A stretch of DNA of 63,066 nucleotides, the filler included, from Salisapilia sapeloensis CBS 127946 (lineage: Eukaryota; Protista; Oomycota): assembly GCA_023334545.1 (NCBI GenBank). It is 6 parts of 6 records of this genome, joined end to end, with 100 filler letters (N's around TTAATTAATTAA, not from the genome) between each part and the next. Parts side by side here need not be neighbours in the genome. Positions count along the whole stretch, not along the records: positions 47,634 to 59,817 come from JAADVB010000416.1; 5 more parts are not named here. One strand, given 5' to 3'. Positions 9,475 to 58,739 of this stretch are shown here, piece after piece. Numbering within the stretch: position 1 is the first letter of the stretch; every line of letters begins with the position of its first letter. The translations under genes were made by a program, and so were the position numbers. The notes beneath the pieces are model-generated. The model did no database searches and had not been told where the DNA came from. It saw nothing but the letters and a program-made list of their open reading frames with translations.

Positions 9475-10012
9475 TCATCGGTCCAAGTGGTGTTGTAAAA
9501 TTTTCCTTCCATCTCCAAAGATACAGAAAGACCAATCCTTAAAAAAGAGATCAATCAGCTTGGACTGCATGGTTTTTCTGACGCAAACGCCACGACGGGC
9601 AATGATAGATTTTATGGAAAAGACATCTTCGCACGCAAGAAATGCCGCTACGAGCGTTCGGTAGCTCCTGTACGAGGTGATCAAATCCGTCGTGCACGTA
9701 GATCCATCGTTAGAAGAGTTAATTATACCTTTCTTTGCAATCTTGCATTTCATATCGATGCCAAGTTGGCAGCAAAACCAAAGCAAAGTCACAGCGGGCT
9801 TGCATGAGCGAACATTCTGAGGAAACCTGCGCCAAATATGGAAGCTGCAGATCTGCACACTCAACCGCGTAGTCAAGTCGCACGAAGGTGCCTAGCTCTT
9901 CGTTCGACCAACCTGCTGGAAACACATATTTGGACACGAAAACGCATGTCGTCGTGGTAACTTGGGAATCACGAAGATGATTCGACACTCCAGTGAAAGT
10001 GAAGACAACCAA
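9475..10012 (-). CDS. Possible two-exon hypothetical protein
   Basis: ORF 9719-10012 splices at AAAG|GTATAA...TACAG|GAGC into the frame of ORF 9475-9876 (...YEMQDCKERSYRTLVAAFLACEDVF...). No family recognised and start uncertain. Confidence 0.35.
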
Positions 10013-10152
10013 ATCAGGATATAAGGATGTGCGCTGCTGGTTTCATCAGTCTATTTCCGCAAAATGTGAAACTTACCCTCCACAAAGTCTTGAAACGGAT
10101 CCAATGACTTTAATGGTCACACCAAACTCTTGCATCGCACGTGGATTTGACC

Positions 10153-12885: not shown

Positions 12886-13152
12886 GTTATGCACGCAGCT
12901 TTAATTTGCTCGCATTAATTACGCAGCGATGTATAATATGACCTCGGTATTTTAAAAGTGCTTCTCATTCAGCTTTACCTTGAATAGCAGAGACTGGATC
13001 CTAACTAAAAGCCGTTCGTGCGCAACTAGTCGTAGCATGAACGCTTCTATATTATAAGTTACGACACATATGAAAATAAAAGTAAAGTATGCTCTGTTCA
13101 TGGTGATCTCCGTACTAAAGATATGACGGTAAATGTCAATCTTTTGTTTTAT

Positions 13153-13397
13153 TAGGGCGTGTCAAACCTGTCAAAGTTGCAAAATATAATGAGGTGTCTG
13201 ATTGCCAAATAAATGTCCATAACTTCTAAAATAATCGGAAGTTTTATTTCGAGCGCTCATGAATCAGTCAGACTCCAAATAGGATAAACCACCTCCGGAG
13301 GTGGTTTTTTATTTTGGAAATAAGATCAGTAGAGCCGAAAGATAAGAATCTTATTTAAGAAAAATAAGGCACTTTTTGCCAGGTTTGGCACCCCCTA
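13153..13397. mobile_element. MITE-like non-autonomous element, about 245 bp
   Basis: Imperfect terminal inverted repeats TAGGGCGTGTCAAACCTGTCAAA and (reverse complement) TAGGGGGTGCCAAACCTGGCAAA. AT-rich, non-coding interior with a perfect 22-bp palindrome at 13286-13307. Confidence 0.65.
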
Positions 13398-13839
13398 TTA
13401 AAACTTTTCTTAATCATTTGTTATATTCTATGTCCCTTAAGACTATTTATATGAATACTAATAACCTGAACGATTTCGCAGATCCGTAGTCTCTCTGTTC
13501 TTTCTGATACCATTGAGCTGTCTAAATGTTAGTAGTTCAGCTCATCTTTCCACAGAAAAGGTGGGCATAACGAATGAATAGATTAGGAATATTACAGTGT
13601 TGATGGAATAATCGGAGTAGGTAGATGGGAGTTTGCATGTGTACTACCAAATAACCACAGTATTGTCTACTTTTAAAACACACGACGTACTCTGCCATGA
13701 CTGCGAAGATAATTGTAAAATAGTATCGTGCACTAGTAGCAAGTAACTGGACTGTCGGCACACGTAGATTCGTCCATGAACACAAAGGCAAAGATAAGAC
13801 CAAAGGAAATTAAACAAACCCAGCTACTCTAACCCACCT

Positions 13840-16248
13840 TCATAACGTTTTACTCGCCAGTGGTCGACCAGGAGAGCTTTGGGCAGAGTGCGGGTACCCG
13901 CCTCCTTCTTTCGGCGCTTCCTCCAACCCCTCCATTTTCCCTCCTTGACGCGTCACCATCCGACGCTTCTTCTCTTCAAACTCTTGCATCTTCTTCCGGA
14001 AGCGCTCGACTTCCTTTTGATGCTTCTCCTCTTCGTTCCGAATCGCTTCGTCTAGCGTCGCGTCTCCAATGTCGTGTTCCTCCTCTTCCGAACTATCAAA
14101 TACCAAGTCCTCAGTCTGTACGCTCGTCGGCAACGGCGTGCTCATCATCAGTTCCTTGTACGCGTCGTTGTCGATCATGGACCCGAGAGACATACCTCTC
14201 GACCGGTCTTCAAGACTCGGATGGTTCATCTCTTCCGCATACGTCTCCTTCGCATGCGGAGGAGAAGGCAGGGGAGATCGAGGAACCTCATTCCCAGACG
14301 CATTCCCTGCCGGAAAAGGAGATTCTTCAGGTGCAGTCATTACGAACTTCATCTGAGCAACGGGAGGTAACGGCTTCGCAAGAAACGCATGTGGCTCCGG
14401 CGCTTCTTCCCACACATCTTCCTCGACGTCTGGCAGATTGGCAATCTTCCCTTCGGTCACGAGGAAGGCGATGCTGTCTGCAATGTCTTCCAAGTCAGGC
14501 TCCAGGATCCCGACGTCTGCAGCCAATTCACACGCGACTTCGTGTGTGCTGTCGGTAAAGAGATTGAACGAGAACTTGATCTCCTTGCTCTTGCCTTCGA
14601 TGATGATCCGCAGACTCAAGAGGATGCTGTGCTCATTATGAGGATCCTTGCAGCTCTTGATGTCATGTCGCTTCCGAGGCTTAGTACCTCTCTCCACCGT
14701 CACGGGACTCTCCGCCGGTGGCGCAACGCTCGAGGATGTCATGGTGTTGTCTGATTCGGCCGACAGAGGAGGACTGTCGTCCTCTTCGCTCACGTTCTCT
14801 AGCTCCAACCGCTGACCTCTTCCGCCCATGACATTCATCCGGTTGTTATGGATTCCAATCTCACTCCCAGGCAAGTCGCGCAAAAAGTTCTCCACACCTT
14901 CGTCTGCGCCCCGGTTGTCGTTTGCAATCGGCCCTTCTTCCCCTTCCTCCTCGATCGTCTCCACCGCACTAGACTCTTGCTCCATCTCGTTATGCTGCTG
15001 CGCAGCCACAGCAGCCACTGCCACGTCTGCTGGGTTCAACGAGCCGTCCTCCGAGTTGGACGTCGCGGACACGGCGACTGGTCTCGCAGAAGAGTCCGAA
15101 GGGTCCTCTACATTGGTGTCGTCTGCTCCGCTCGAAGAAGACTGCGGGACTGCCCCATCAACCTTTTCCTCTGACGTGTCATCTGGACGCTCACAGTCTT
15201 CATTGTCTATGTCTTGCATGGACGCGTCGTTCAGACTGTCGTGTCTCGCCATGTCTCGAGCCTTGATATCTGCCTCATCTTCCGTCAGACACTCGACCAT
15301 GTCGCCATCATCGTCCTGCGCTTTTAAAAAGTCATGGTTCAAAAGGTACTCGGTCGTGACGTCAATCTCGCCATTCCCGCGACTTAAGCACAACTCGATA
15401 AAGTCTCGAGCAGGCGCACTCACGACACGTTGCAGCCCTTTCGGTCGGATCCCAGCCGTCACTTTCTTGTAGATCTGCGCTGGATTGACACACTCCGAGT
15501 ACGGAACTTCCTTCGTGACCATTTCGAGGACGCACATGCCAAACGCGTAAATGTCCACCTTTTCATCGTAACTTTCGTCATAAAGCTCTGGAGCCATGAA
15601 TTCAGGCGTGCCCAAGACGCTCTGAGCTTTCGTACGCGTGTGGACGGCCAGTTGCGTCGAGAGACCTAAATCTCCGATACGCAAGTCGCCCGTGTTACCG
15701 TTGATAAAGATGTTGTCGCACTTAAGATCACGATGGATGACCGGGGGAGACTGACTGTGCAAGTAGTGCAGCCCTTCGAGGATCTGGACGCACCACCGGC
15801 GAATGATCTTCCACTTGATGAACTGCACGCGCTTGATGTACGACTTGAGAGTCCCGGACGTCATGATCTCGGTGATGAAAACCACTTGGTTCTTCTCTTT
15901 GCTGAACCAGGATCCGTAAAAGTTGATAATGTTCTTGTGCTCAAGTTTCTGCAAGAGCTGCACCTCCTGGATGATACGCGTCTTCTCCGTCGCGGGGAGC
16001 TGACCAATGTCAATGGCATTCCACGCGACGTCGATCCCTTGGTCCGTATCGTACGCCTTGAATACAGTCTTGTACGCGCCTGTGCCTAACCGAACGTCAA
16101 AGCGGATGTACCGACCACGTGGAGAGTGCTCGACAGGACGGTCGCCATCACCCCCAAAGTCGGGCACGAAGGCACTGCTGCTTTCAAAGCTAGAGGACCG
16201 ACTAGATGCGTCCATTGGCGTGGCTGGATACGAGTGTTGGTGGACCAC
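13840..16248 (-). CDS. WNK: WNK (with-no-lysine) serine/threonine kinase
   Basis: LGTGAYKTVFKAYD with catalytic Lys in subdomain I, VAWNAI in place of VAIK, IHRDLKCDNIFING, IGDLGL, VLGTPEFMAPELY. Autoinhibitory-like region KEIKFSFNLFTDS. Confidence 0.93.
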   Translation of the reverse strand: MVHQHSYPATPMDASSRSSSFESSSAFVPDFGGDGDRPVEHSPRGRYIRFDVRLGTGAYKTVFKAYDTDQGIDVAWNAIDIGQLPATEKTRIIQEVQLLQKLEHKNIINFYGSWFSKEKNQVVFITEIMTSGTLKSYIKRVQFIKWKIIRRWCVQILEGLHYLHSQSPPVIHRDLKCDNIFINGNTGDLRIGDLGLSTQLAVHTRTKAQSVLGTPEFMAPELYDESYDEKVDIYAFGMCVLEMVTKEVPYSECVNPAQIYKKVTAGIRPKGLQRVVSAPARDFIELCLSRGNGEIDVTTEYLLNHDFLKAQDDDGDMVECLTEDEADIKARDMARHDSLNDASMQDIDNEDCERPDDTSEEKVDGAVPQSSSSGADDTNVEDPSDSSARPVAVSATSNSEDGSLNPADVAVAAVAAQQHNEMEQESSAVETIEEEGEEGPIANDNRGADEGVENFLRDLPGSEIGIHNNRMNVMGGRGQRLELENVSEEDDSPPLSAESDNTMTSSSVAPPAESPVTVERGTKPRKRHDIKSCKDPHNEHSILLSLRIIIEGKSKEIKFSFNLFTDSTHEVACELAADVGILEPDLEDIADSIAFLVTEGKIANLPDVEEDVWEEAPEPHAFLAKPLPPVAQMKFVMTAPEESPFPAGNASGNEVPRSPLPSPPHAKETYAEEMNHPSLEDRSRGMSLGSMIDNDAYKELMMSTPLPTSVQTEDLVFDSSEEEEHDIGDATLDEAIRNEEEKHQKEVERFRKKMQEFEEKKRRMVTRQGGKMEGLEEAPKEGGGYPHSAQSSPGRPLASKTL

Positions 16249-18822
16249 CCGAGCGTTTTTTTCTTAAAGTCTCTCTTCACTCTGTTGCGCCGCAACAAGT
16301 TGAGGGAGATGCACGGAGAGTCAAATTGAGAGCTGCGGTTAATCTTCACGGATACTGAAAGCTACTGCCGGACGTAGAGACGCCTCACGACTAGCGCGGA
16401 GGACCGAGCGAGGGCACAAACGTCGTTCCTGTGTTTTGGCCGCGCTTAGTGCGCATCGGTCGGATGGTACCGTCACATATTGATATATTTTGAGACAGGA
16501 GGGTTCGGAGGTGATAGTGGGTGCACTTTATCAGGACACAGAGAAAGACCACTGGACCTCGAGCCGACCGATAGATCCTTGGCCGCATCTTAAAGCGATG
16601 CACGGGCGTTCGGGTTGTAGTAAAAGACGGTTTATAGGCTTTTAGCGGAGCTGTGATTGCTCGGGTGGAATTGCCATTGGTGCAGATTTGCAGTGGTGAC
16701 TTTGAGATTCAGTACTAGATCATGTTGATGCTTCTCGATATCTTCTCGTTGATTTACATGATATACATCAGAGTAGCTTTTAAAGGGGCACGTTCATGAT
16801 GCATTACGTGTCTCGAAATTGAAGGCTGCTAATAGTATATCACGCATGTAGAAGCTGATGTATGAGATGCAACGCAGTCTTCGATGCATTCAACGCGAGA
16901 TCGACATTTAGCCGGTAGAAAACATCAGCGCAATAGATATGAAACGTGAGTCAGTCCATGTGTAGGCTGCGATTAGTACTGGTTTCCGGTAAGAACAAGT
17001 GCAATGCTTTCTAATAAACTTTTGTTTTATTTCTGCTTTTAGAAATCGAACATTAAGAAGCAAACAATGACCAAATGAATGCGTAGGCGAGTTTCATAGA
17101 TATATGCTCCAGCATGGCCTTGCATGTCTTGTTGAAACCTAGTAATGCTCACCGACAAGATGCACACTGTCGTCGATTGTAAAATAGGGTCCAACGACGT
17201 ACAATGCATCAAAGCTTAATGAAAAGCAATTATGACCAAGATATTGCCCTTTAGAGCATGGTGAAGAGCGTATGTGCAAGTTCACCATCTTTGGTATGCA
17301 CAATGTTCAATGTATGGTTTGCATCCATCCAACGTCCTGTGCTATATCTCTCTAAGAACATATCTGATCGCACAACTGTGGAAACGGCTAGTCCAAGATT
17401 CATCACTCTTTCACTTCACTAGTGCGTACGCACCAACATGCAAATATTAAAGATATATATTGATGCTATAAAACAGACCGAGCTTTCTACGCAAAAATGC
17501 TAACGAGGCATGTTTTGCTGTCTGAATACCCTTGTTTTTTAAGTTTAGTACCCGCTGAGTTAGTGCACAGCGTACTAGAAACTAATTTGGATGCCTAGCG
17601 CTTCAAAATCCCTATTCTTTCTCGAACGATCCAATTTGAGTATGCATAAAGCTACAACGTATCTGTGCGCTTATTACTTGCATCGTGGGCACCACAGCCT
17701 GCTTCTGCAGATATAATTTCATACCTATTGATCTCGTGTTGCGATACGAATTTGAGAGAGATAATTTGTAATAGTGCCTAGAGCTTCGTGCAAGTCCAAT
17801 TATGATGAAACGTCAACTTTTAGCCACGAGAAACCTTATCTCTCTCCAAACTACTGCATGATAAAAATGCATAGAGCCATCACCATCTTTTGAGACAATA
17901 GAGATCTTAAAAGCGTAGATTTCGCTCGCGATCTATTTAGATGGTAGATTCAACAAACAATCGTCTGTATGGCTGCTTATCGCCCGTTTCTCGTAGAAAT
18001 GTAGATTTCGTACGATTCCCTCCTACTCTAGACTTTTGCTTCCATCTAAGAGAAGGTAGATAACGATTCAAACCTAATCGAATAAGGCGATTTTTATCGT
18101 TTGTCCCGACCACACTCTCTGTTTATAGATTCAACATTATGAGCATTTTTTCATCACCAAGGCTCTTGATTTCAGCAATATCATTATGAGAGAGAGTAAT
18201 AATTGGTGAGTATCGAGTTCCAACATGAAAAAGCAAAGTAAAAACGATAGCTTGAAGATATTTTGCTGTTGCGAATCCGTTTCAACACAAGATTGACTGC
18301 AATGCTTCGAATCTAATTATGTAGTGTGCTGGATTTATTCACAGTGGTATTAGTGCTTAGCAAGTACCGAATAAGCATGCTGTGTATGCTCCAGTCTGAT
18401 TTCTCATCTAGATTTTGTAAAATGGTGGGCAAATACAAACCTATAACAGCGTGTATAATATCGAATACCAGCCTAAGATACACGATCTGTGCTAGATATA
18501 CTGTAATGGGCATTTGGAGATTCCGATCCTACTCTACCTTTGCGTTTAAAGATATTGAGAACTACAATTTCCGCATAAAGTGCTATCGCATGAGCTTAGA
18601 ATCATTTCCCGCATTTGCAAATAAAAATCGTAGCAGTCCAGTTTAAACGAATTCCTATATGCTTCTTCGTCTTGATCGTAGTAAAACCATCTCCTAAGCA
18701 AAGAGAGTATTTATATCACAAAGGAATAACGATGAAATCAATTGAAACTCGGAGCAAAATTATGTAGATAGAAGGAGCAGAGACGAACACTTTAAAAAGA
18801 TGAAAGAATTATGATGTCTTAT

Positions 18823-47832: not shown

Positions 47833-47975
47833 AGTCGAGAGTAGGAATGTCGTAAGATGATGAAAGAGCTTTTTATAGAGACATCTATGAAGAGATACGA
47901 GTTCAAAAGTTAGGAAGAATAAGAGCATGCCATTTATTTCCTTTGTCGTGACGGAACGTGTTTGCAGTGCTTGGA

Positions 47976-48893
47976 CTAGGAAGTGGATTGGATAGAGTCC
48001 GCCGACTGGGCAAATGTCGCACACTTCACTGTGTTCACTAGGAGCATGGCGATGGTCATGGGGCCAATGCCGCCTGGCACGGGCGTGATGGCCGACGCCC
48101 TCTCGCTGGCAGACGCAAAATGAACATCTCCACACACTCGGTATCCCTTCTTCGAATCAGCATCGTCGACGTAGTTCATACCGACATCCACGACCACTGC
48201 ACCTGGCTGGAGCCAGTCACCTGGAATGAATTCTGGTGCTCCAGCGGCGACCACGACGATGTCGGCTCTAGCGACTTTTTCGTAGAGGTCTTTGGTAGAG
48301 GTATGACAAGTGGTCACAGTGGCGTTTCGTCGGAGCATGAGGAGGCTGAGAGGGAGACCAACGAGCTGGCTTCTTCCAATCACTACGACGTCCTTGCCTT
48401 CGATGTCGACGTTGTTTCGGTCCAAAAGCTCAAGGCAGCCTGCTGGGGTGCAAGGCTGGAGGTACAATTTGCTGGAGCTGGACTGTGCAGTTGCGACGGG
48501 TTTCTTGCCGAGCTGAGCAAAGTGCGTAGCGTGAAGGGCATCCACGTCCTTCCAGGTGACCACAGACTCCAAGAGCTCTTCCTCATGCTCATGAAGGTCC
48601 CCTGGAAGAGGCAGTTGGAGGAGGATTCCATGGACGGAAGAGTCGGTATTCAGCTTTACGATCAACGAATGAACGTCCTCAAAGGACGAGGAGGCAGGAA
48701 GCTCATGCACATCAGGCGTAATGCCAACTCGATTGCACGCATTTTTCTTCAGCCGAATGTACGTCTTCGACGCTTGGTCGTCTCCTACTAGCACTAGAGA
48801 TACTTTGGGCGGAGAAGGTAGTGCAGCAATGCTCTCCTTTAGCTCTGCCTCAATTTCCTTGCTGCATGCCTTGCCATCCAGTAGTCGAGCCAT
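47976..48893 (-). CDS. folD: Bifunctional methylene-THF dehydrogenase/methenyl-THF cyclohydrolase
   Basis: LVGDDQASKTYIRLKKNAC (YxxxK), GILLQLPLP, KDVD, PCTPAG, VVIGRS, VDVGMN, ITPVPGGIGPMTIAML. Confidence 0.95.
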   Translation of the reverse strand: MARLLDGKACSKEIEAELKESIAALPSPPKVSLVLVGDDQASKTYIRLKKNACNRVGITPDVHELPASSSFEDVHSLIVKLNTDSSVHGILLQLPLPGDLHEHEEELLESVVTWKDVDALHATHFAQLGKKPVATAQSSSSKLYLQPCTPAGCLELLDRNNVDIEGKDVVVIGRSQLVGLPLSLLMLRRNATVTTCHTSTKDLYEKVARADIVVVAAGAPEFIPGDWLQPGAVVVDVGMNYVDDADSKKGYRVCGDVHFASASERASAITPVPGGIGPMTIAMLLVNTVKCATFAQSADSIQSTS

Positions 48894-48991
48894 GACGCAA
48901 TTTGAATATGGAGGTTATGCCCTTTCGTTCCACAAAAGTTTTCCGACAACAGTAAAAACGATATATGTACCGCCAATTACTCCTCATAAGT

Positions 48992-51900
48992 CTACCACTT
49001 TCCAATGTACGTCCGCAGCAGTTTGTCGTCAATGCTAGGGCACTCGATGCCGGCGTGTTTTAGCAATCCATCGGCAATCGACGCATCGAACACCATGTCG
49101 TTCTGCAAATACACTTCAAACGCATCCAGTCCGGCTGCCAGTCGCTGTCCTTCGAGACTCTCGTCTGCCATGCTCAAGATCGTCTCTTTCCACTTTTGAT
49201 ACTCGACCTTCTCTAAGCTCTTGGCGTTCTCGACCTTTTCTTTTCCAGCTGCAATCAACTCGTCAAAGAATGCAGCACCGTCGATGGGTTCCACTGGGTT
49301 CTGCATGTGCAGCGTCTGGCCTAGAGACGCCGTGGGGACTTGCGCTGCAAAGTGCGTCACGGCTCTAGCTGCAAAGTCCACTGGCGTCATGTCAAATCGC
49401 CAATCCGGTCGATCGGGCACCATTCCAGCGCTCCAGCAGCCTCTTAAGAGTAGGTAGATAAAGTCGCTTTCGTTCCATGCTCCCGTGACGGACGACGGCG
49501 CCATGTTGCCTGGACGTAGAATCGATACAGGCAACCCTCTCTGCGCTGCCTCGCGACACATGGACTCTGCAACCCACTTACTCTGCGCATATCCATTGTC
49601 CAACTGTTCCCAGCTATTAGTCAAGTCCGCAGTCTCCTTGAGCACTTTGTTAGGGAAAGTGGACGGGAAGACTCCGTTCGTCGAGATGTAGTGCACAGGC
49701 TTCACGCGCGTCTTGGCCAGACCATTCGTGACAGCTAGACGCAGCACTTCTTGGGTGCCGAGGACGTTGGAGCTCTTCAAAGAGGCGTATGGCTTGACCA
49801 GGTTCACGTCAGCTCCGCAGTGGATGATAGCGTCCACCTCCATTGCCAGCATCTTGAACGTGTCGTTTCCCAAGCCGAGCAAAGGCTGGGCCAAGTCACC
49901 AGCTAACGGCACGATACGATCCTCCACGTCATGGTCCGCTAGCTCCTTATACAGTTTATACTTTTGAAGCGTCTGGCGAAGACGCTTGCCAACGTCTTCA
50001 CCATTCGCTCCTCGAGCCACGCAATACACCATCACGTGCGTTGACTTGATCAGTTCGTGCAGGACGTGGATACCGAGGAAGCCCGTGGCACCAGTCAGAA
50101 GTAACGTACGTGGCGGCTTACCCACCATCTCAACACGGTAGCGAGAGTACCCTGCTTTTCTCGTTGCGGCTGGGTAGATAGACATGTCTAGAGCTGCTTC
50201 TAGCGGAAGTACCAGTTGGGATCCATTTTCCTCCGCTTCCGGTTCGTGCGTTAGCTTACTGTCGATCTTGGCTGCAATCTTCTCCAGCTCCGGACCGGAC
50301 AAGACGTCTGCCAGCGTGAAGTTGACGCCGAACGTGTCTTTGATGCTCGAGACCAAGCGTGCTGACAAGAGACTGTGGCCGCCCGCCTCGAAGAAACTCT
50401 TGTGCCGATGTAGCCCTGCTTTACTCTTCAGGCGCAGCAGATCGACCCAGATGTCTAGCAGCTTGTGTTCCGTAGCAGTCTGCGGCTGAGATTCGGCATC
50501 CACCGTGGCATCCATGGACTCGTTACGCAGTTTGACGGCTTCTTCCACTGACGGAATCTGCTTTCTGTCGAGCTTTCCACTGGCGTTGTTGATCGGAAGA
50601 GCATCGAGCTGGACAAAGACGGACGGAATGGCGTAGTGCGGCAGTCTCGAGCTGAGAAAGTCACGAAGCTTGGCACTACTGGGCACACGCTCCCAGTCAC
50701 CTGGAACAATGTACGCGACGAGTCTCTTATCAGATCCTTCGTCTCCCTCCGTCAAGACCACTGCGGTTGACACGAGAGGGTGCTGCGCCAACGCACTTTC
50801 TACAGCGCCCAACACGACGCTGTACCCTCGGATCTTGACCATAAAGTCACATCGGCCGATGAGCTCTAGCGAGCCATTCGGCAGGAAACGAGCACGGTCG
50901 CCAGTCTTGTACACGAGTTCGCCTCGGACAATGTCGCGACGGAACCGTTCGGCTGTCTGCTCTGGACGATTCAAGTAGCCGATTGCGAGACAAGGGCCTC
51001 CAATGTAGAGTTCTCCCGGGACACCGATGGTCACTTGTTCTAACTTGTCGTCCAGAATGTACGCCTTGACATTCGGCATGACGTGACCACAGGATGCGTA
51101 CTTGCCAGTAAGTGCGACGTCCAAAGGGTTCATGTGCGCCAAGTCGACGGTGCACACGTCATGACATTCCGACACACTATAGAGGTTCTGGAGCTCACAG
51201 TCTGGTAGTAGGCGCATGAACCTCTGTCGCAACTCCATCGTCACGACTTCGCCACACAAAAAGACGATTCGAAGAGATGCAAGTTGCCTTTTCAAGTCCT
51301 CTTCTTCACACGTGTCAAGAACAAGCTGCAGTAAGGATGGAGTGAAGAGCACACGGGTGATATGGTGGTCCAGCATGTACTGCGCCACCTGCGCTGGATC
51401 GTAGATGGTGTTGTCTGGAATCACGTACGTCGTACGATTGCCTAGTATCGGACGCAAGAGTTCCCACACAAAGAAGACATGGCACGCTTCTCGTTCATTC
51501 TCTCCATATGGGAGGTTGGTCAGACGCCAGTGATACGAGTGGACTGCTCCTCTATGCGGACAGCAAATACCCTTCGGCACGCCAGTCGTACCGGAGGACA
51601 TGACAACGTATGCTAGATCATCCGGGTGTGTCTTAATACGGTCCGCAGGCATGACCGGGATCTTTTTTTTCTCCAGTCCGTCCATCCACCCTTCGTCCAT
51701 GCACAGCGTTTCTTGCCATGCTGGAAGACGAGAGCGATAGAGCTGCTTGGTGAGAATCGTAATCGGTTTGGATTCTTCCATGACTCTTTCGAGAAGATCT
51801 GGCGGATACACGATCTCGAGGGGCATGTAGGCTCCACCAGCCTTGAGAGCTGCGACGTATGCGATGACGAATTCGAGGCAGTGGTCCATGAAGATACCCG

Positions 51901-52924
51901 TGATCGTATTCGGACGAACACCAGCAGCGTAGAGGTAGTCTGCAAGTCGCTCGCTTTGGACATCCAGTTCCCCAAATGTAAGCGATTTGTCTTCGTAGAC
52001 CACAGCAGTCGCGTTCGGAGAGCGCTTTACGGCTTCATAGAAAAGGTCATGGAGACACTTGTCGCTAGGGTAGGATGCAGTAGCAGCGTTCCAGTCGTTA
52101 ATTTTAGTCTTGCTTTCAATCGCATTGCGTGCGAGGAGAGACTCGAGTTTGGATGACATGGACGATAGAAATGCTGTTTCGCTCTCTTGCGTCAGGTAGA
52201 AGTGCCCACCTTGGAATATCTCCATCTCAAAACCTACACTGCAGTCGGTCGAGTGCAAGTGCTTCCAATTTTCCAGGCCTTGTTGAGGAACAGAGGCGTC
52301 GGTATCTCCACCATAGACAGACAGGCCGATCGTATCCAAGCAGATAGTGTCTTTCTTGGTTTGCAGTGACTTGGAGACTGCATTATGAAGCTTGAGATCG
52401 TTGCGGAGCTTTTTTAGTACTTCCTGACGCTTGGAGGCAACCTCCAAGATGCCGGCGGGCGTCCCATTCCAGTCACGCAGTAGCTTGACGAGCTTTTCCT
52501 CACTCTGCAGCGTTGCAGAGTCGAATATGTCGCTTCCACCCATTGGATTTGATCCAGATAGGAAGAGGTGCATTGGAAGAGCCAAGCCTTTGGACTGGAG
52601 ATGGTCCAGCAGAGCGACGGCAGTCAACGCACCCAGTGAATGGCCAAACACAACGTACGGTTTATCAAAGAACCCAGTGCTCATACAGCCCATAGCCTTT
52701 TGCAACCACAAGTCTAAGTCGACTGAGTCCGTTTCATTCGTGTCGGACGCCCACTCCCAATCCAAACTCCACGTTTCGATGGGCACGTGGGCCGACGTAA
52801 GATGCTGGTGCCAATCTTCGGCGAAAGATGCTGCAAAGCTGCCGGCAGGAGGGAGGACAAGAAGCCTCAACGGTGCTTCTTCAACTTCTTCCACTCGGTG
52901 GAACTTCATGCGCGTCTGAACCAT
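48992..52924 (-). CDS. NRPS-like enzyme, domain order TE-A-T-R (thioesterase, adenylation, carrier protein, thioester reductase); ATRR/carboxylate-reductase-like
   Basis: TE: VFGHSLG, GGDTD, FQGGHFYL. A: YVVMSSGTTGVPKG, GELYIGGPCLAIGYLNRP, YKTGDRAR, GRCDFMVKIRGY, NASGKLDRK. T: FFEAGGHSLLS. R: LLTGATGFLG, IIHCGADVN, GYAQSKWVAE, RPGNM. Intronless, 1310 aa. Domain calls are well supported; substrate is not known. Confidence 0.92.
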   Translation of the reverse strand: MVQTRMKFHRVEEVEEAPLRLLVLPPAGSFAASFAEDWHQHLTSAHVPIETWSLDWEWASDTNETDSVDLDLWLQKAMGCMSTGFFDKPYVVFGHSLGALTAVALLDHLQSKGLALPMHLFLSGSNPMGGSDIFDSATLQSEEKLVKLLRDWNGTPAGILEVASKRQEVLKKLRNDLKLHNAVSKSLQTKKDTICLDTIGLSVYGGDTDASVPQQGLENWKHLHSTDCSVGFEMEIFQGGHFYLTQESETAFLSSMSSKLESLLARNAIESKTKINDWNAATASYPSDKCLHDLFYEAVKRSPNATAVVYEDKSLTFGELDVQSERLADYLYAAGVRPNTITGIFMDHCLEFVIAYVAALKAGGAYMPLEIVYPPDLLERVMEESKPITILTKQLYRSRLPAWQETLCMDEGWMDGLEKKKIPVMPADRIKTHPDDLAYVVMSSGTTGVPKGICCPHRGAVHSYHWRLTNLPYGENEREACHVFFVWELLRPILGNRTTYVIPDNTIYDPAQVAQYMLDHHITRVLFTPSLLQLVLDTCEEEDLKRQLASLRIVFLCGEVVTMELRQRFMRLLPDCELQNLYSVSECHDVCTVDLAHMNPLDVALTGKYASCGHVMPNVKAYILDDKLEQVTIGVPGELYIGGPCLAIGYLNRPEQTAERFRRDIVRGELVYKTGDRARFLPNGSLELIGRCDFMVKIRGYSVVLGAVESALAQHPLVSTAVVLTEGDEGSDKRLVAYIVPGDWERVPSSAKLRDFLSSRLPHYAIPSVFVQLDALPINNASGKLDRKQIPSVEEAVKLRNESMDATVDAESQPQTATEHKLLDIWVDLLRLKSKAGLHRHKSFFEAGGHSLLSARLVSSIKDTFGVNFTLADVLSGPELEKIAAKIDSKLTHEPEAEENGSQLVLPLEAALDMSIYPAATRKAGYSRYRVEMVGKPPRTLLLTGATGFLGIHVLHELIKSTHVMVYCVARGANGEDVGKRLRQTLQKYKLYKELADHDVEDRIVPLAGDLAQPLLGLGNDTFKMLAMEVDAIIHCGADVNLVKPYASLKSSNVLGTQEVLRLAVTNGLAKTRVKPVHYISTNGVFPSTFPNKVLKETADLTNSWEQLDNGYAQSKWVAESMCREAAQRGLPVSILRPGNMAPSSVTGAWNESDFIYLLLRGCWSAGMVPDRPDWRFDMTPVDFAARAVTHFAAQVPTASLGQTLHMQNPVEPIDGAAFFDELIAAGKEKVENAKSLEKVEYQKWKETILSMADESLEGQRLAAGLDAFEVYLQNDMVFDASIADGLLKHAGIECPSIDDKLLRTYIGKW

Positions 52925-53201
52925 GGTCTAGCGGATGGAGGGATCTGTCGCTCCCGCCGGTCGATTTCGTTATGATCTGATACGATGCAGATCAAGTTTC
53001 ACAAAATACCACACACTAGAAGATGGCTACATGTCGGAACGAATTGCATCGCTTGGAATAGACATTCTTGGCGTCTATTCTTAGTTTCTTTCTAGGGTGA
53101 GAGCTCGAGTACGATAGACTGGGCGAGCATCGGCATGGTATGTTCATGTTCTCTATCTTTTTTAAGGATATACGTGTTGGAATTGCATTTAACTTCTTTT
53201 T

Positions 53202-54923
53202 ATGAAGGAAGCGAATAGTACGCCTATAGATGGAGGGAATGAGTCGCCTCGGCACTCGGAAGCATCATTTTACGCCAGCGAGATATACGAATCGGAGTTT
53301 GAAGAAGAGGGAGAGACGACTATCACTAGGAAGTCTAGTCTATCATCTCCCACTAAGGCGGATGACCAAGATGTAGTCTTGGGTTCCGACGACAAAGCAA
53401 TGGCTATAGAAGAGAGTGAAAGCATACAACGTTTGAATACACCACGGCGCTCACTTCCATTTCTATCCAAGCTACCTAGTGTCAGCGAGAAAGAATATTT
53501 TAACCTTGAATCCAAGGAAGACTCGATGCAGGACCGAGATAGTGATGCAGAAACAAATGCATCGAGCAATCCAACACGGAAAGAGTCGCAGCCAGATGAA
53601 GGTCTACCACATGAGATTAGTCCACAGACTAATCAATCGGAGTCGCAACTGTTGAGCCCATCAAGCATCAGCGAATTGCATGAAGAGGTGTCCGTATCTC
53701 GAGAAGAAGCATTGGACGATAAACATAGTGGGATACTAAAGAAAGACGCGAGCGTACATGTAGATGCTGCTGGAACTACTGAAGTAAAGGACGCTTCACT
53801 GGAGGGAGAAATTGTCGAGGCTGATGACAAAAATCTGACGGATAGCACCTCAGCAGCTGTTATCATTGGGGATGGTAACTTGGCGAAAGTTGAAGGCATA
53901 TCGATGTCAAAGTCAAACACGGCAAGTGAACAAACGAATGAACACGTCGAAAAGAGAATGCAATTCAAGATGGATGAAAATGTCGAGGAAGGTTCAAAAC
54001 CACCGATTTGTCGTCATCAGACACCGCGATTCGTCGAGACTAAAGAAGATAACGCTACTCGCTCATCCGTCGGAAAAGGAAATCACCACCAAAGTAAAGA
54101 CGCGATGGAAGACCACAGTTCTACTACTCTAGCACCTATCTTCCCAACGAAACACCCACCTACTAGAAATTTACCGCATAAAAGTTCTGCATCTCGATCT
54201 CCAAGTAAGGTTTCGTCGGGAAGCACTTACGATGAATATCAACTTCCTCCGCGAAAGCCAGAAGTATTTAAGCAAAAAGGTACGAAGAGTCCTACGAAGC
54301 CTATCAAAGCCCAGCCGCCTGCTCGAGGGCCCAGCAACATCCAGATGCATCTAGAGAAGGCAACTGAGGAACAGCGACGATGGCTATTCTTTAACATGTT
54401 TCGCCACGGACAAACCTTGGACAAGTACGAAGAGTTTGTACCGAAAGAGATTGCACTAGCGAATTCTACACTTTTACCAATGAAGAACCAGGGAGTACAT
54501 AAAGAAGCAGTTCCACCTGGAGAGAGGCAACGAATGACGAAAGCTTACAGTGGTGGGAGGGGGCGGAAACTTTTGAATGGTCATACTGTACAGCATGGCC
54601 AACAGTGGATCGAACCGAAGCCGCATGACTCTGCGCTGTCTACTTATGACTCGATCCTTGACAAGTATTGTAAAACCGTGACGAGTCCTACAATCCAGCG
54701 TCAAATTTATAAAGCACGAGAAACAGATTTGTCTCCGCAACAGGCGTATGTCCTACAGCAACGTGTCGAGCGTGAATGGAGACGAGGGAATGGAAATAGC
54801 TTTGGTGGCGTTAGCTCTTCTTACACGACAGCGATTGTCCCTTTGCCACCAACGAAATCAGCATCTCGACGACCAAGCAGACCACATACATCCAACAGGC
54901 GAGAAAATGTGAATAAAAAGTAG
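53202..54923 (+). CDS. Hypothetical protein, mostly disordered with a short folded-looking C-terminal region
   Basis: 573-aa ORF, acidic Ser/Glu-rich N-terminus; C-terminal segment ATEEQRRWLFFNMFRHGQTLDKYEEFVP. No family recognised. Confidence 0.7.
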   Translation: MKEANSTPIDGGNESPRHSEASFYASEIYESEFEEEGETTITRKSSLSSPTKADDQDVVLGSDDKAMAIEESESIQRLNTPRRSLPFLSKLPSVSEKEYFNLESKEDSMQDRDSDAETNASSNPTRKESQPDEGLPHEISPQTNQSESQLLSPSSISELHEEVSVSREEALDDKHSGILKKDASVHVDAAGTTEVKDASLEGEIVEADDKNLTDSTSAAVIIGDGNLAKVEGISMSKSNTASEQTNEHVEKRMQFKMDENVEEGSKPPICRHQTPRFVETKEDNATRSSVGKGNHHQSKDAMEDHSSTTLAPIFPTKHPPTRNLPHKSSASRSPSKVSSGSTYDEYQLPPRKPEVFKQKGTKSPTKPIKAQPPARGPSNIQMHLEKATEEQRRWLFFNMFRHGQTLDKYEEFVPKEIALANSTLLPMKNQGVHKEAVPPGERQRMTKAYSGGRGRKLLNGHTVQHGQQWIEPKPHDSALSTYDSILDKYCKTVTSPTIQRQIYKARETDLSPQQAYVLQQRVEREWRRGNGNSFGGVSSSYTTAIVPLPPTKSASRRPSRPHTSNRRENVNKK

Positions 54924-55774: not shown

Positions 55775-57811
55775 TTGCAATTAGACCAAAATGATTCGCA
55801 AAGACGGTCATCTTTCGCGAACAAAACCCGGAATTCAGTCAACTTTAATCGAAGACAAAGTTTGGAGGATGCAAGTGGTAGTTACTTCGACGATACCAAT
55901 GTACAAAGCACAGAGCCACTTTCATCGCAAGTACAGCTAGTGAGATCCTCGCTCCGCAATAAGTCGTCCACTTTTGTTCAAAAGATGAGACGTCAGCGAC
56001 AGATAGCAGAGCAATACAAACAGTCGCGACTCGCTGAGTTGGAGGTTGAGTGCGAGCTAGAAGAAAATATACATCTTCGCATGAGGAGAAAGAGAGCAAA
56101 ACCTCTAAAGCACTTGCCGCCTGACAGAGTTGGAAGAGAATGTTTCAATGACGAAGAGATACTTTTGCGAACCGTTATCGAGAACTGCAACTCATCATCC
56201 TCTAACGCTTCAGTTGAAAAAGAAGCAATGCTTAATAGTTCTATTAGTAGAAACATACAGGACGGATATGAAGTGCACAGTAGACAGAAACCGCCAGAGC
56301 AAGAGGAGGAGCAGTTTCTCGATCCTGATAAGCACGTGCAGTTGCATCGCCGTTCAGATGCTGCACTCACGATACAACGTCACTGGAGGCAGCATCGTGA
56401 GCGGATAGACAGTTGTACAAGGATCAATGGGTTTAGTGAAGAAAATGTGTACACCTACGCTGATGATTCCGACGAAAGTGAAGAAAATAGTGATAAAAGT
56501 TATGATGAAGGTGAAAGCTCGTCCGACATTCATGCCATTATGAACGATGCGGAGGACATAGTAAATGACAAGTATGAGGAAAGTAATGTGCAAGAATGGG
56601 AAAATCAAGATACTGTTGATTGCATCGACGCGGATTCGGATGGAGAACGTGTCTTGGAGCGAAGCGAACAAGCTCAAGACATAGAAAATGTACATGATAA
56701 TGTTGCAGAGATTCAAGAGACTATTCCAGTTGACGTAACTGCTGCTATAACAGCTTCAGTGCTGAATAAAATCGAGTATGAAGAAGATACTGATGTTGGA
56801 GTACCCAACAATCTAAGTGGAAACTTAGGCCAGCACAAGGATGAAATATATGCGTCTACATCTGACCTGCCGATTAATAAAATAAAGAAGGAGGATTCCA
56901 TTGTAGCCATTGCATCTTCAGAGCAACACGAAAGTGAGCAACTAGAAGAGAATATTAAAGGATCGAAAGAAAATCTAGGTAGAAGTTTAGAGCATAACAA
57001 GGATGAAGTAGGTTCCGCGACGTCTGAATCAATTGCTGACAATACAAAGGAAGACGGTATAATTGATACCGTGCCAGCTTTAGTGCGAAACGAAAGCGAA
57101 AAAGCAGAAAAGAGTACTGTTGGAACACAAGAAAATTTAAACGGAAACTTGGCGCGCAAGAAGGATGACGTAGTTGCGTCTACATTTAAACCATTGATCG
57201 GTGGTACAAACGACGATGATGCAGTTGCTTCTTTAGTACCATCTCAACAGCGTGAAAGTGAGTATAAAGAAAGTATGGATGTTGGAGCAGATATGAATGT
57301 AGATGAAAAATTGGAGCAAAACGAGGTAGACAATGATATATCTGCGTCCGAACCACTAGCCAGCGATACAGGGAAAGGCGAGAGAGCTGGTCAGAGTAGC
57401 AATGCTGATCAAGAAAATGATATTGTTGTAGGAAAAATGGAAGGTGAAAGTATAAATGGTACTGGCCAGACTGATGTCGATGATATCAGAGCTGACCGTA
57501 CTCCTCGAAACAGTACTGGTCACACTTCTCCTAGCGACGCATCCCATGAAAATTACGATGATGCGGCAAATGACTACTCATCGTCTAGACCAGAAGTATC
57601 TATAGATGATGCCACAAGTAACACTACAGCAAAGGGCGATAAGCTAGAAGAAGATAATGAAGCCAATGAGCATGCACAGAAATTTTATGGTGTCGATGAC
57701 GCAGATCCAGAAACATCTTCAAAGTTGAACTCAGTTCTACATGAAGTCGATCGTGCAATCCATGCAGCCGCCGAGCGTATACAAAAGTTTTGGAAACGAT
57801 ATCGAAACTAG
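55775..57811 (+). CDS. Acidic IQ-motif protein with 54-aa internal repeats; upstream exons near 55200-55750 likely
   Basis: IQ motifs AALTIQRHWRQHRER and C-terminal AAAERIQKFWKRYRN. Long open frame; no ATG at the listed start, so additional 5' exons are probable. Confidence 0.7.
   Translation: MQLDQNDSQRRSSFANKTRNSVNFNRRQSLEDASGSYFDDTNVQSTEPLSSQVQLVRSSLRNKSSTFVQKMRRQRQIAEQYKQSRLAELEVECELEENIHLRMRRKRAKPLKHLPPDRVGRECFNDEEILLRTVIENCNSSSSNASVEKEAMLNSSISRNIQDGYEVHSRQKPPEQEEEQFLDPDKHVQLHRRSDAALTIQRHWRQHRERIDSCTRINGFSEENVYTYADDSDESEENSDKSYDEGESSSDIHAIMNDAEDIVNDKYEESNVQEWENQDTVDCIDADSDGERVLERSEQAQDIENVHDNVAEIQETIPVDVTAAITASVLNKIEYEEDTDVGVPNNLSGNLGQHKDEIYASTSDLPINKIKKEDSIVAIASSEQHESEQLEENIKGSKENLGRSLEHNKDEVGSATSESIADNTKEDGIIDTVPALVRNESEKAEKSTVGTQENLNGNLARKKDDVVASTFKPLIGGTNDDDAVASLVPSQQRESEYKESMDVGADMNVDEKLEQNEVDNDISASEPLASDTGKGERAGQSSNADQENDIVVGKMEGESINGTGQTDVDDIRADRTPRNSTGHTSPSDASHENYDDAANDYSSSRPEVSIDDATSNTTAKGDKLEEDNEANEHAQKFYGVDDADPETSSKLNSVLHEVDRAIHAAAERIQKFWKRYRN
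56810..57295 (+). repeat. Degenerate coding tandem repeat, 162 bp (54 aa) period, three copies plus a partial fourth
   Basis: Units start at 56810, 56972 and 57134: NLSGNLGQHKDEIYAST..., NLGRSLEHNKDEVGSAT..., NLNGNLARKKDDVVAST..., each with ESE at positions 41-43. Confidence 0.75.
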
Positions 57812-57905
57812 ATTGGGCATTTAGCAGTGTGTTTACTTCATAAGGAAACCTTATCAGAGGTATCACTACTGGTATGCACCATAGCTTTGTGTGCTAAAAG
57901 TCAGC

Positions 57906-58739
57906 TTACACGTCGTGCTGAGATGCAGGATCCCAGCCACTGATGTAGTTTGCGTCAAGGCCATCCAGGCGTTCCATTTGATCCGCGGTCAGCTTTAAGT
58001 CCATAGCTTCAAAGTTCTCCTTGATCCGCGCCGCTTTCTCAGACTTTGGCAGGGTCACAAAGCCCTTTGCCAGACTCCACGCGATCATGACTTGCGCCGG
58101 CGTTGCACCGGATTCTTTTGCAATGTCGCCAGCAACAGGGTCATCGAACTTTTGGCCACGAACAAGTGGAGAGTAAGCCTCCATGAGAATTCCTTCGTTC
58201 TTGCAGTATTCCACCAACTCCTTTCGTTGCAACCACGGATGAAGCTCCATTTGGTTTACTGCAGGCTTGACACGACAATGACTTAAAAGTTTCTTAATGT
58301 GGTTGATACCAAAGTTCGAGATGCCAATGTCTTTAACGATCCCTTCCTTTTGCATATCTTCCAATGCTCTCCAACGCTCTCCGCGGGTTTCACTGTCAAA
58401 TGGAGCGTGGAGGAGGTAGAGGTCGATGTAGCCGCACCCAATCCGGTCATTGCACTGCTTGATGGTCTTCACAGCATCATCGTAGGAGCAAGACCGTTCG
58501 ACTAGCTTACTCGTGATGAAGATTTCCTCTCTCGGGATGCCGGAATCACGCACAGCACTCCCTGTATCCTCCTCATTTCTATAAGCTTGGGCAGTATCCA
58601 CATGTCTGTAGCCGAGACGCAAGGCTTCTCGGACAGCATTATAGGTTGTCGGGCCAGGTGTGATCTGATAGACACCGAAACCAACGGTAGGAATAGCTTG
58701 TCCACTCGGCAAGAGCGTCGTAGGGCACTTCATGCTCAT
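57906..58739 (-). CDS. Aldo-keto reductase (AKR5 / 2,5-diketo-D-gluconate reductase-like)
   Basis: Catalytic tetrad in GYRHVDTAQAYRNE (D, Y), FITSKL (K), DLYLLHAP (H); also IGISNF, NQMELHP, AYSPL, LPKS. Confidence 0.93.
   Translation of the reverse strand: MSMKCPTTLLPSGQAIPTVGFGVYQITPGPTTYNAVREALRLGYRHVDTAQAYRNEEDTGSAVRDSGIPREEIFITSKLVERSCSYDDAVKTIKQCNDRIGCGYIDLYLLHAPFDSETRGERWRALEDMQKEGIVKDIGISNFGINHIKKLLSHCRVKPAVNQMELHPWLQRKELVEYCKNEGILMEAYSPLVRGQKFDDPVAGDIAKESGATPAQVMIAWSLAKGFVTLPKSEKAARIKENFEAMDLKLTADQMERLDGLDANYISGWDPASQHDV

What the first reader, a model, noticed from the sequence alone, without database searches (positions are those of the whole stretch)
50560..52070. A domain carries ATRR-type (glycine betaine) signatures and lacks the amino-acid-binding Asp
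Seen: core A4 reads ACHVFFVWELLRPI instead of FDxS, and A5 reads NLYSVSECHD instead of NxYGPTE; nearby are LEIVYPPDLL, YDPAQ, CGEVVT and RGYSVV. Established: the A4 Asp (GrsA D235) binds the alpha-amino group, and its loss marks non-alpha-amino-acid substrates. From memory, Aspergillus ATRR has very similar motifs (ACNVFFIWEILRP, LELAYPPDLL, NCYSACETHE, RGYSVV) and an aromatic cage for trimethylammonium. Inference: the substrate is glycine betaine or a related onium carboxylate such as a DMSP-like osmolyte, which would give a betaine-to-choline route in a stramenopile.
Basis: partly seen in the sequence, partly recalled or inferred. Interest (0 to 1): 0.8.

Follow-up and report, generated by a model that had tools for sequence, protein, structure and literature searches.

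The report
Oomycete betaine-type carboxylate reductase variant
This oomycete gene encodes an uncharacterised enzyme whose substrate pocket matches that of the known glycine-betaine-to-choline reductase ATRR, but it lacks ATRR's second reductase and carries an extra proofreading thioesterase, so it probably makes betaine aldehyde rather than choline.

Summary
All quoted motifs lie in one intact 1310-aa ORF (48992..52924, minus strand). The A4 Asp is replaced by Val.

The adenylation domain is ATRR-type. Its 10-residue code (VFWSFCLDVK) matches ATRR-architecture proteins of animals and protists (consensus VFWSWCLDVK) at 9 of 10 positions. The published A. nidulans cage residues F201/W204/W270/E304 map onto F484/W487/F555/D589. 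The domain sits in a clade (support 100) with animal/protist and fungal-type ATRRs, apart from amino-acid-activating NRPS domains.

The enzyme is not an ATRR, however. Its architecture is thioesterase–A–T–R: no R2 aldehyde reductase, plus an N-terminal type II thioesterase. Orthologues occur in the sampled oomycetes, obligate biotrophs included, and in other protists. I found no paper describing this family.

Most likely it activates glycine betaine, or a close onium acid, and reduces it to the aldehyde. Choline would need a further, unidentified reductase.

Bacterial sister enzymes are TE–A–T–KS–AT–KR–ACP synthases; two of the four located in genomes lie next to a carnitine acyltransferase, which independently suggests a trimethylammonium-acid starter.

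Substrate and product remain inferred. A diatom enzyme of this clade was reported to reduce tryptophan.

The parts
48992..52924 (-). Complete intron-less ORF of 1310 aa plus stop, an NRPS-like enzyme with domain order TE-A-T-R
   Evidence: full-length orthologues of 72-77% identity in oomycetes
52151..52867 (-). N-terminal type II thioesterase-like domain (aa 20-258); catalytic Ser96 (GHSLG), Asp209 and His241 (GGHFY)
   Evidence: Pfam PF00975 61.8 bits; closest solved structure is RifR 3fla; Ser96 and Asp209 are invariant among 10 family members, and His241 (GGHFY/GDHFY) is kept in the members whose aligned stretch reaches it
50573..52039 (-). Adenylation domain (aa 296-784), ATRR / onium-acid type; specificity code V483 F484 W487 S530 F555 C557 L581 D589 V590 K784
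   Evidence: AlphaFold2 model with pLDDT 90.7
51446..51487 (-). Core A4, ACHVFFVWELLRPI: Val483 in place of PheA D235; cage residues F484 (= AnATRR F201) and W487 (= W204)
   Evidence: F and W are invariant in 46 clade members
51260..51262 (-). F555, PheA position 299, the equivalent of AnATRR W270; Trp in every other oomycete orthologue
51158..51187 (-). Core A5, NLYSVSECHD: L581 (position 322) and D589 (position 330, the equivalent of AnATRR E304)
50270..50464 (-). Thiolation (carrier) domain, aa 821-885; phosphopantetheine attachment at Ser851 in GGHSLL
   Evidence: Pfam PF00550; motif located
49004..50104 (-). Thioester reductase domain (aa 941-1307), ATRR R1 type; NADPH motif GATGFLG (aa 945-951); catalytic Y1112 and K1116 (YAQSK), aligning with the R1 catalytic Tyr motif of ATRR proteins
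   Evidence: TIGR01746 279 bits and PF07993; 37% identity over its full length to Trichoplax ATRR R1; R-domain tree; the protein ends where R1 ends, with no R2

Best explanation
The gene encodes a carboxylic-acid reductase of the NRPS-like A-T-R kind. Its adenylation domain belongs to the small clade that recognises carboxylic acids carrying a permanent positive charge (onium acids). Proposed mechanism: (1) The A domain binds a small quaternary-ammonium carboxylate, most likely glycine betaine. The trimethylammonium head sits against F484, W487 and F555 and is balanced by D589, and K784 holds the carboxylate. The A domain adenylates the acid with ATP. (2) The acyl group is transferred to the phosphopantetheine on Ser851 of the T domain. 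(3) The single R domain, which is of the ATRR R1 type, uses NADPH to release glycine betaine aldehyde. (4) Choline forms only if a separate, unidentified aldehyde reductase acts, or if this R can carry out a second reduction. (5) The fused N-terminal type II thioesterase clears wrongly acylated carrier domains. Shown here: the domain order, intact catalytic motifs, pocket identity with ATRR-architecture proteins, clade membership of both A and R, and conservation in the sampled oomycetes. Inferred: the substrate, the aldehyde as end product, and the editing role of the thioesterase.
For: Architecture and intact motifs. Pocket: the window code VFWSFCLDVK against VFWS[W/I/V/L/H]CLDVK in about 120 A-T-R1-R2 proteins, including ones NCBI names 'glycine betaine reductase ATRR'. 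Mapping onto the published AnATRR cage F201/W204/W270/E304 by spacing. The same mapping through the fungal-type contig L088, with F214/W217/W283/E317 and spacing 69/34. Phylogeny: the A domain lies in a clade with support 100 together with animal/protist ATRRs, L088 and the bacterial TE-A-T-PKS enzymes, apart from 10 bacterial NRPS A domains. R groups with ATRR R1 domains, support 94. Biochemistry of the anchor: AnATRR accepts only glycine betaine, needs the positive charge, and its R1 stops at the aldehyde. In-vivo support for the Asp-330 pocket type: in Meloidogyne, glycine betaine worsens and choline rescues the Miatrr RNAi phenotype. Independent context: the bacterial sister enzymes are TE-A-T-KS-AT-KR-ACP, and two of the four located in genomes lie next to a choline/carnitine O-acyltransferase with the gene order swapped. 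That fits a glycine-betaine starter extended to a carnitine skeleton. A housekeeping role is suggested by presence in obligate biotrophs such as Bremia, Peronospora, Plasmopara, Hyaloperonospora and Peronosclerospora.
Against: No enzyme of the TE-A-T-R branch, and none with the Asp-330 pocket, has been assayed in vitro with glycine betaine. The window's code shares only 4 of 10 positions with the fungal-type sequence (VFWTWNCEIK), although 4 more differences are conservative. Position 299, the third cage wall, is variable in the clade (W, I, V, L, H, Y), so a full aromatic cage is not a fixed feature. A diatom A-T-R1-R2 enzyme with the same FFVW motif was reported to reduce tryptophan and to bind salicylates. 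There is no R2 and no conserved neighbouring reductase, so the fate of the aldehyde is open. AN5318 itself could not be fetched. The fungal anchor is a metagenome contig of unknown organism.
Confidence: 0.55

Rival explanations
1. Same chemistry but a different onium acid. The A domain would select another small positively charged carboxylate, such as dimethylsulfonioacetate, DMSP, beta-alanine betaine, proline betaine or gamma-butyrobetaine/carnitine, and R would release the corresponding aldehyde.
For: BurA-A shows that related pockets, which lack D235 and carry an acidic residue, can take DMSP. The window's pocket differs from the fungal type at positions 301 (C against N) and 322 (L against C). 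AnATRR shows weak activity on sulfobetaine. No in-vitro data exist for this pocket type.
Against: The pocket is identical to that of nematode ATRRs at 9 of 10 positions, and those have a betaine/choline phenotype. AnATRR rejects DMSP and beta-alanine betaine by size. L581 is bulkier than the fungal Cys, which argues for a pocket that is not larger. Terrestrial oomycetes are not known DMSP users (my own knowledge).
Confidence: 0.2
2. An aromatic acid or amino-acid reductase, as reported for the diatom PtNRPS1 (tryptophan to tryptophanol, with salicylate binding). The aromatic pocket residues would stack on an aromatic substrate instead of caging a cation.
For: PtNRPS1 has the same F214-F215-V216-W217 motif and ATRR architecture, and was reported to form tryptophanol in vitro and in vivo.
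Against: Asp235, needed to bind an alpha-amino group, is absent. That study does not report testing glycine betaine: the term appears only in its reference list. The in-vivo product level was in the pg/L range, and the authors say other substrates are not excluded. The invariant acidic residue at position 330 is best explained by a cationic substrate.
Confidence: 0.1
3. An alpha-aminoadipate reductase (Lys2), or a fragment of a peptide synthetase, as the database names of orthologues suggest ('L-aminoadipate-semialdehyde dehydrogenase large subunit', 'Linear gramicidin synthase subunit D').
For: Those names are attached to orthologues P0002, P0007, P0025 and P0028. The overall A-T-R layout resembles Lys2.
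Against: The Lys2 equivalog model TIGR03443 scores 389.8 bits against a cutoff of 1030.1. There is no condensation domain. The A domain separates from amino-acid-activating domains with support 100. Asp235 is lost. Oomycetes make lysine through diaminopimelate (my own knowledge, not tested here).
Confidence: 0.03

Closest known systems
Fungal ATRR (Aspergillus nidulans AN5318), NRPS-like glycine betaine reductase (Hai, Huang & Tang 2019)
   Same: Both have an A-T-R1 core and have lost the alpha-amino-binding Asp. Phe and Trp at positions 236 and 239, an aromatic residue at 299, an acidic residue at 330 and Lys517 are shared. The R domain is of the R1 type with the catalytic Tyr motif. Both belong to the same A-domain clade (support 100).
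   Different: The window protein has no R2 aldehyde reductase and carries an extra N-terminal type II thioesterase. The pocket has Asp not Glu at 330, Phe not Trp at 299, Cys not Asn at 301 and Leu not Cys at 322 (compared with the fungal-type contig L088). Identity to L088 over the A domain is about 40%.
Animal and protist ATRR-architecture proteins (e.g. Haliotis and Nematostella 'glycine betaine reductase ATRR', Meloidogyne MiATRR, Hondaea, Seminavis)
   Same: The specificity code is nearly identical, at 9 of 10 positions. A-domain identity is 45-50% and R1 identity is 37%.
   Different: They form the sister clade (support 99) and have the architecture A-T-R1-R2 without a thioesterase. They too lack in-vitro characterisation.
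BurA-A of Burkholderia, the DMSP-activating 'zwitterion-specific' adenylation domain
   Same: It lacks D235, has an acidic pocket residue that meets the cationic head group, and loads an onium acid onto a carrier domain.
   Different: It feeds a PKS-NRPS line instead of a reductase, and its substrate is a sulfonium acid one carbon longer.
Diatom PtNRPS1 (A-T-R1-R2), reported as a tryptophan-to-tryptophanol reductase
   Same: It is a stramenopile enzyme with the same FFVW motif in A4 and an ATRR-type layout.
   Different: It has R2 and no thioesterase. The claimed substrate is aromatic, and betaine does not appear to have been tested.
Bacterial and fungal carboxylic acid reductases (CAR) and Lys2
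   Same: They share the A-T-R logic: ATP-dependent activation, a thioester on phosphopantetheine, and NADPH-dependent release as an aldehyde.
   Different: Their A domains belong to different clades with different specificity. The CAR and Lys2 models score far below their cutoffs.

Membership tests
ATRR (NRPS-like glycine betaine reductase) | [quoted passage not shown] | tested here: not met
   Pfam finds TE, AMP-binding, PP-binding and NAD_binding_4 only. The protein ends where R1 ends, and the stop codon lies 98 nt before the next gene.
ATRR (NRPS-like glycine betaine reductase) | A domain without the alpha-amino-binding Asp (PheA D235) | tested here: met
   V483 occupies that position.
ATRR (NRPS-like glycine betaine reductase) | Cation-binding pocket: aromatic residues equivalent to F201, W204 and W270, plus an acidic residue equivalent to E304 | tested here: met
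   F484, W487, F555 and D589. The mapping rests on spacing and on alignment to L088 and to ATRR-architecture proteins. Two of the four are conservative replacements (W to F, E to D). The pocket geometry was not examined.
ATRR (NRPS-like glycine betaine reductase) | A domain falls in the ATRR clade and not with amino-acid-activating domains | tested here: met
   Clade support is 100. Within the clade the window lies on the TE-bearing sister branch, not inside the A-T-R1-R2 branch.
ATRR (NRPS-like glycine betaine reductase) | R1-type thioester reductase with the catalytic Tyr (AnATRR Y811) | tested here: met
   Y1112 in the YAQSK motif aligns with the R1 Tyr motif. R groups with ATRR R1 domains, support 94.
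ATRR (NRPS-like glycine betaine reductase) | [quoted passage not shown] | not testable with these tools
   This needs an enzyme assay.
Lys2 / alpha-aminoadipate reductase | Reaches the equivalog model TIGR03443 | tested here: not met
   389.8 bits against a cutoff of 1030.1.
Type II (editing) thioesterase | Alpha/beta-hydrolase fold with a Ser-Asp-His triad and similarity to RifR-type TEII | tested here: met
   PF00975; RifR 3fla at E = 1.5e-14; Ser96, Asp209 and His241 conserved. The editing function itself was not tested.
Carboxylic acid reductase (CAR, NF041592) | Reaches the equivalog model | tested here: not met
   190.5 bits against a cutoff of 1300. The reaction logic is shared, but the protein is not a family member.

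The most novel reading that the evidence does not exclude
TE-A-T-R would be a distinct, ancient and widespread eukaryotic enzyme family, found in oomycetes, ochrophyte algae, a nucleariid and Mesostigma. It would turn glycine betaine into betaine aldehyde with built-in proofreading, it appears to be the only ATRR-type enzyme of oomycetes, and it would work with a partner reductase not yet identified. Its bacterial sisters would use the same TE-A-T loading unit to start a one-module polyketide synthase that extends glycine betaine by two carbons into carnitine. That would be a route to carnitine for which I found no description.
Probability: 0.35. Interest if true: 0.75.

Novelty: new variant of a known kind. 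Interest (0 to 1): 0.6.

Why it matters
The reverse path from glycine betaine to choline has been shown biochemically only for the fungal ATRR. A 2022 review of marine glycine betaine metabolism calls its presence in marine microbes unexplored.

An ATRR-type enzyme is conserved across oomycetes, including obligate plant parasites that have shed much of their metabolism. That points to a use for host or self-made betaine in these crop pathogens and gives a concrete gene to test. The different domain layout, with a thioesterase in place of the second reductase, raises two mechanistic questions: who reduces the toxic aldehyde, and why is proofreading needed?

All current database names for the orthologues (gramicidin synthase, aminoadipate reductase) are wrong and could be corrected.

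The bacterial relatives next to a carnitine acyltransferase suggest a possible polyketide-type route to carnitine, which I did not find described.

Tried and rejected
(1) I could not fetch A. nidulans AN5318 itself. Three word-indexed homologue searches returned oomycete, protist and animal relatives but no named fungal ATRR. The ATRR paper's supplement holds the alignment only as images, the PNAS version is not held, and the nematode and diatom supplements contain no sequences.

(2) The exhaustive representative search, run with the Trichoplax ATRR as query, was swamped by giant multi-module NRPSs and gave nothing usable. The query was a poor choice; the R1-R2 part alone would have been better.

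(3) The metagenome scan was dominated by the generic SGTTGxPKG pattern. Only L088-L090 were clade members, but L088 supplied the fungal-type anchor.

(4) Gene context in eukaryotes was uninformative. The flanks hold FolD in the window and Lagenidium, a biotin carboxylase in Bremia and P. cinnamomi, and unrelated genes in L085 and L086. The aldo-keto reductase 5 kb upstream in the window is not found in the Bremia or Lagenidium loci. I therefore rejected both FolD and the AKR as evidence.

(5) A control counting Asp235 among bacterial NRPS A domains from pairwise alignments was unreliable, because the A4 loop differs in length. I did not use it.

(6) The AlphaFold model confirms a confident canonical A-domain fold. 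The tools return no coordinates, so neither pocket geometry nor docking could be examined.

(7) Whether R carries out two or four electrons of reduction cannot be decided from sequence. Its best solved relative, MxaA, is to my knowledge a four-electron reductase, whereas its phylogenetic kin, ATRR R1, is strictly two-electron.
Full report
**What is there.** The piece 47634-59817 holds one long uninterrupted ORF on the minus strand, 48992..52924, of 1310 aa. Pfam and NCBIfam give these domains:
- a thioesterase domain, aa 20-258;
- AMP-binding, aa 296-651, plus AMP-binding_C, aa 708-784;
- a phosphopantetheine-binding domain, aa 821-885;
- a thioester reductase, NAD_binding_4 aa 943-1189 and TIGR01746 aa 941-1307.

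There is no condensation domain and no second reductase. Every quoted motif is present at the stated place. The catalytic motifs of all four domains are intact:
- thioesterase: GHSLG with Ser96, Asp209, and His241 in GGHFY;
- A domain: SSGTTGVPKG, YKTGD and GKLDRK;
- carrier domain: GGHSLL with Ser851;
- reductase: GATGFLG and YAQSK.

**Whose gene it is.** Full-length relatives of 72-77% identity with the same four domains occur in Phytophthora, Nothophytophthora, Bremia, Peronospora, Plasmopara, Peronosclerospora, Hyaloperonospora, Globisporangium, Lagenidium and '[Pythium] brassicae'. In the A-domain tree the window is sister to the six other oomycetes sampled, within an oomycete clade of support 100. 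Relatives of 48-61% identity, with TE-A-T-R or A-T-R layouts, come from a nucleariid (Parvularia), ochrophyte algae (Tribonema, Discosporangium, Chrysoparadoxa, Triparma), Mesostigma and eukaryotic metagenome contigs. The source names on the orthologues ('Linear gramicidin synthase subunit D', 'L-aminoadipate-semialdehyde dehydrogenase') are automatic and do not fit. The Lys2 model scores 389.8 bits against a cutoff of 1030.1, and the CAR model scores 190.5 against 1300.

**The pocket.** HMMER alignments to solved A domains place W487 on the conserved Trp of the FDxSxWE motif. This gives the following residues in PheA numbering: 235 V483, 236 F484, 239 W487, 278 S530, 299 F555, 301 C557, 322 L581, 330 D589, 331 V590 and 517 K784. 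The alpha-amino-binding Asp is therefore gone.

The ATRR paper names F201, W204 and W270 as an aromatic cage and E304 as the counter-charge. A later paper confirms that F202 and W204 are neighbours in AnATRR. In ATRR-architecture proteins whose A domain starts at residue 1, the equivalents are F204, W207, W274 and D308, giving spacings of 70 and 34. The published numbers give 69 and 34, and the window gives 71 and 34. So the published cage corresponds to F484, W487, F555 and D589.

**Comparison with real ATRR sequences.** A search seeded with a Trichoplax A-T-R1-R2 protein (architecture confirmed) returned about 120 such proteins from animals, nematodes, a thraustochytrid, diatoms and an ichthyosporean. 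NCBI names some of them 'glycine betaine reductase ATRR'. Their code is VFWS-x-CLDVK, where x is mostly W but also I, V, L or H. The window's VFWSFCLDVK differs only at x. Over 164 clade members, positions 236 F, 239 W, 278 S, 330 D and 517 K never vary.

I could not fetch AN5318 itself. A metagenome contig, L088, encodes an A-T-R1-R2 protein with these features:
- the motifs LELAYPPGLL, ACNVFFIWEILRP, NCYSASETHE and RGYSVV;
- F214, W217, W283 and E317, with spacing 69/34, exactly as published for AnATRR;
- the R1 tyrosine motif at Y827, where AnATRR has Y811.

I treat L088 as a fungal-type ATRR, although its organism is unknown. Its code, VFWTWNCEIK, shares four positions with the window and differs conservatively at four more (S/T, F/W, D/E, V/I). 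That level of difference is in line with the nematode paper's statement that five of ten positions differ between plant-parasitic nematode ATRRs and AnATRR.

**Phylogeny.** The A-domain tree has 62 rows, built with IQ-TREE using a mixture model in the quick setting. One clade of support 100 holds everything with this pocket and excludes ten bacterial amino-acid-type NRPS domains. Inside it are three lineages:
- the animal/protist A-T-R1-R2 proteins, support 98-99;
- the long-branched fungal-type L088, whose placement is unresolved;
- a TE-bearing lineage, support 93, made of bacterial TE-A-T-KS-AT... synthases (100) and the eukaryotic TE-A-T-R/A-T-R proteins (94-95), which include the window.

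The R domains tell the same story. The window's R, the other TE-A-T-R reductases (98), the ATRR R1 domains (99) and L088's R1 group together against six bacterial NRPS reductases, with support 94. So A-T-R is inherited as a unit, while R2 and the thioesterase are alternative additions. None of the proteins examined carries both.

**What this means for function.** In A. nidulans the A domain accepts only glycine betaine. The positive charge is essential, since the neutral isostere is inactive. DMSP and beta-alanine betaine are rejected. R1 makes only the aldehyde, and R2 makes choline.

For the Asp-330 pocket type the only functional data are in vivo. In Meloidogyne, glycine betaine aggravates and choline relieves the Miatrr RNAi phenotype, mirroring the fungal knockout.

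On this basis the most likely reaction for the window's enzyme is glycine betaine + ATP + NADPH to glycine betaine aldehyde. Choline would need another enzyme, or a second reduction by R itself, and neither could be tested here. An aldo-keto reductase gene lies 5 kb upstream (57906..58739), but it is absent from the Bremia and Lagenidium loci. No reductase recurs next to the gene elsewhere, so I do not count it as evidence.

The thioesterase is closest to RifR-type editing thioesterases and keeps its catalytic triad. An editing role is the standard reading for such domains, but it is inference here.

The gene's presence in obligate biotrophs argues for primary rather than secondary metabolism.

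**Independent support from bacteria.** The closest bacterial relatives are single-protein TE-A-T-KS-AT-KR-ACP synthases of about 2400 aa. They occur in an Oceanispirochaeta, in Mixta mediterraneensis, in a cyanobacterial MAG and in two proteobacterial MAGs. Their code is VFWS[W/Y]NDDVK. In L007 a choline/carnitine O-acyltransferase (PF00755, 299.8 bits) lies directly upstream of the synthase. In L006 its 72%-identical homologue lies directly downstream. Loading glycine betaine, adding one malonyl unit and reducing the keto group would give a carnitine skeleton. This is the nitrogen counterpart of BurA turning DMSP into gonyol. The idea is untested, but it fits a trimethylammonium-acid starter for the lineage to which the window belongs. 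I found no paper describing such a route.

**Caveats and rivals.**
- The third cage position varies widely in the clade, and the window's Phe there is unique among the sequences examined.
- No in-vitro assay exists for any Asp-330 enzyme.
- A diatom A-T-R1-R2 enzyme with the same FFVW motif was reported to make tryptophanol. That study does not appear to have tested betaine, and its authors leave other substrates open.
- Another small onium acid remains possible.
- The AlphaFold2 model of the A domain is confident (pLDDT 90.7, pTM 0.84) and matches ordinary NRPS A domains at 36% identity or less. No ATRR-type structure has been solved. The tools give no coordinates, so the pocket geometry was not checked.

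**Verdict.** The protein is not an ATRR by architecture. It represents a thioesterase-bearing, R2-less variant that I found undescribed in the searchable literature. The proposed betaine-to-choline route is therefore only half encoded here.

Noticed in passing
L007 8120..9820 and 9992..17212; L006 5096..12301 and 12424..14121; also L008 6478..13671 and L005: The bacterial sister enzymes are single-ORF TE-A-T-KS-AT-KR-ACP synthases. In the two proteobacterial MAGs they lie immediately next to a choline/carnitine O-acyltransferase, which is rare in bacteria, and the gene order is swapped between the two. A glycine betaine starter plus one malonyl extension and ketoreduction would give carnitine. 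I found no description of such a route.
   Followed up: partly
window 47976..48893 (-): A FolD-type methylene-THF dehydrogenase/cyclohydrolase gene starts 98 nt after the stop codon of the TE-A-T-R gene, on the same strand. One orthologue gene model (P0026) is fused to the same domains, and Lagenidium has FolD about 6 kb away. In Bremia and P. cinnamomi a biotin carboxylase takes that place instead. This is probably inherited synteny and not a functional cluster.
   Followed up: partly
window 57906..58739 (-): An aldo-keto reductase gene (PF00248, 175 bits) lies 5 kb upstream. It is a tempting candidate for the missing aldehyde-to-alcohol step, but it is not found in the Bremia or Lagenidium loci.
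   Followed up: partly
window 51260..51262 (F555): The window has Phe at pocket position 299, where all 28 other oomycete orthologues have Trp. This is the most variable pocket position in the whole clade.
   Followed up: partly
window about 52835..52855 (aa 24-30 of the thioesterase): The thioesterase's conserved PHAGG motif reads PPAGS in the window. Its Pfam score (61.8 bits) is much lower than in the nucleariid or bacterial relatives (about 146 bits), although the Ser-Asp-His triad is kept.
   Followed up: no
window 53202..54923 (+) and 55775..57811 (+): Two long ORFs (573 and 678 aa) encode low-complexity Ser/Glu/Lys/Asn-rich proteins with no Pfam match. They lie in a region of lower GC (0.41-0.47) and strong purine skew (AT skew up to 0.26). 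The second has IQ-like motifs near both ends. It is not established that they are real genes.
   Followed up: no
L088 3779..7258 (metagenome contig Ga0068621_1000233): This is a fungal-type A-T-R1-R2 gene. Its cage residues have exactly the published AnATRR spacing and position 330 is Glu. The ORF stops about 100 residues into R2, probably at an intron close to the contig end.
   Followed up: partly
proteins P0003, P0139 and P0026 (orthologue gene models): Several public gene models fuse the TE-A-T-R gene to its neighbour, either a biotin carboxylase or FolD. All named orthologues carry misleading automatic names (gramicidin synthase, aminoadipate reductase).
   Followed up: no
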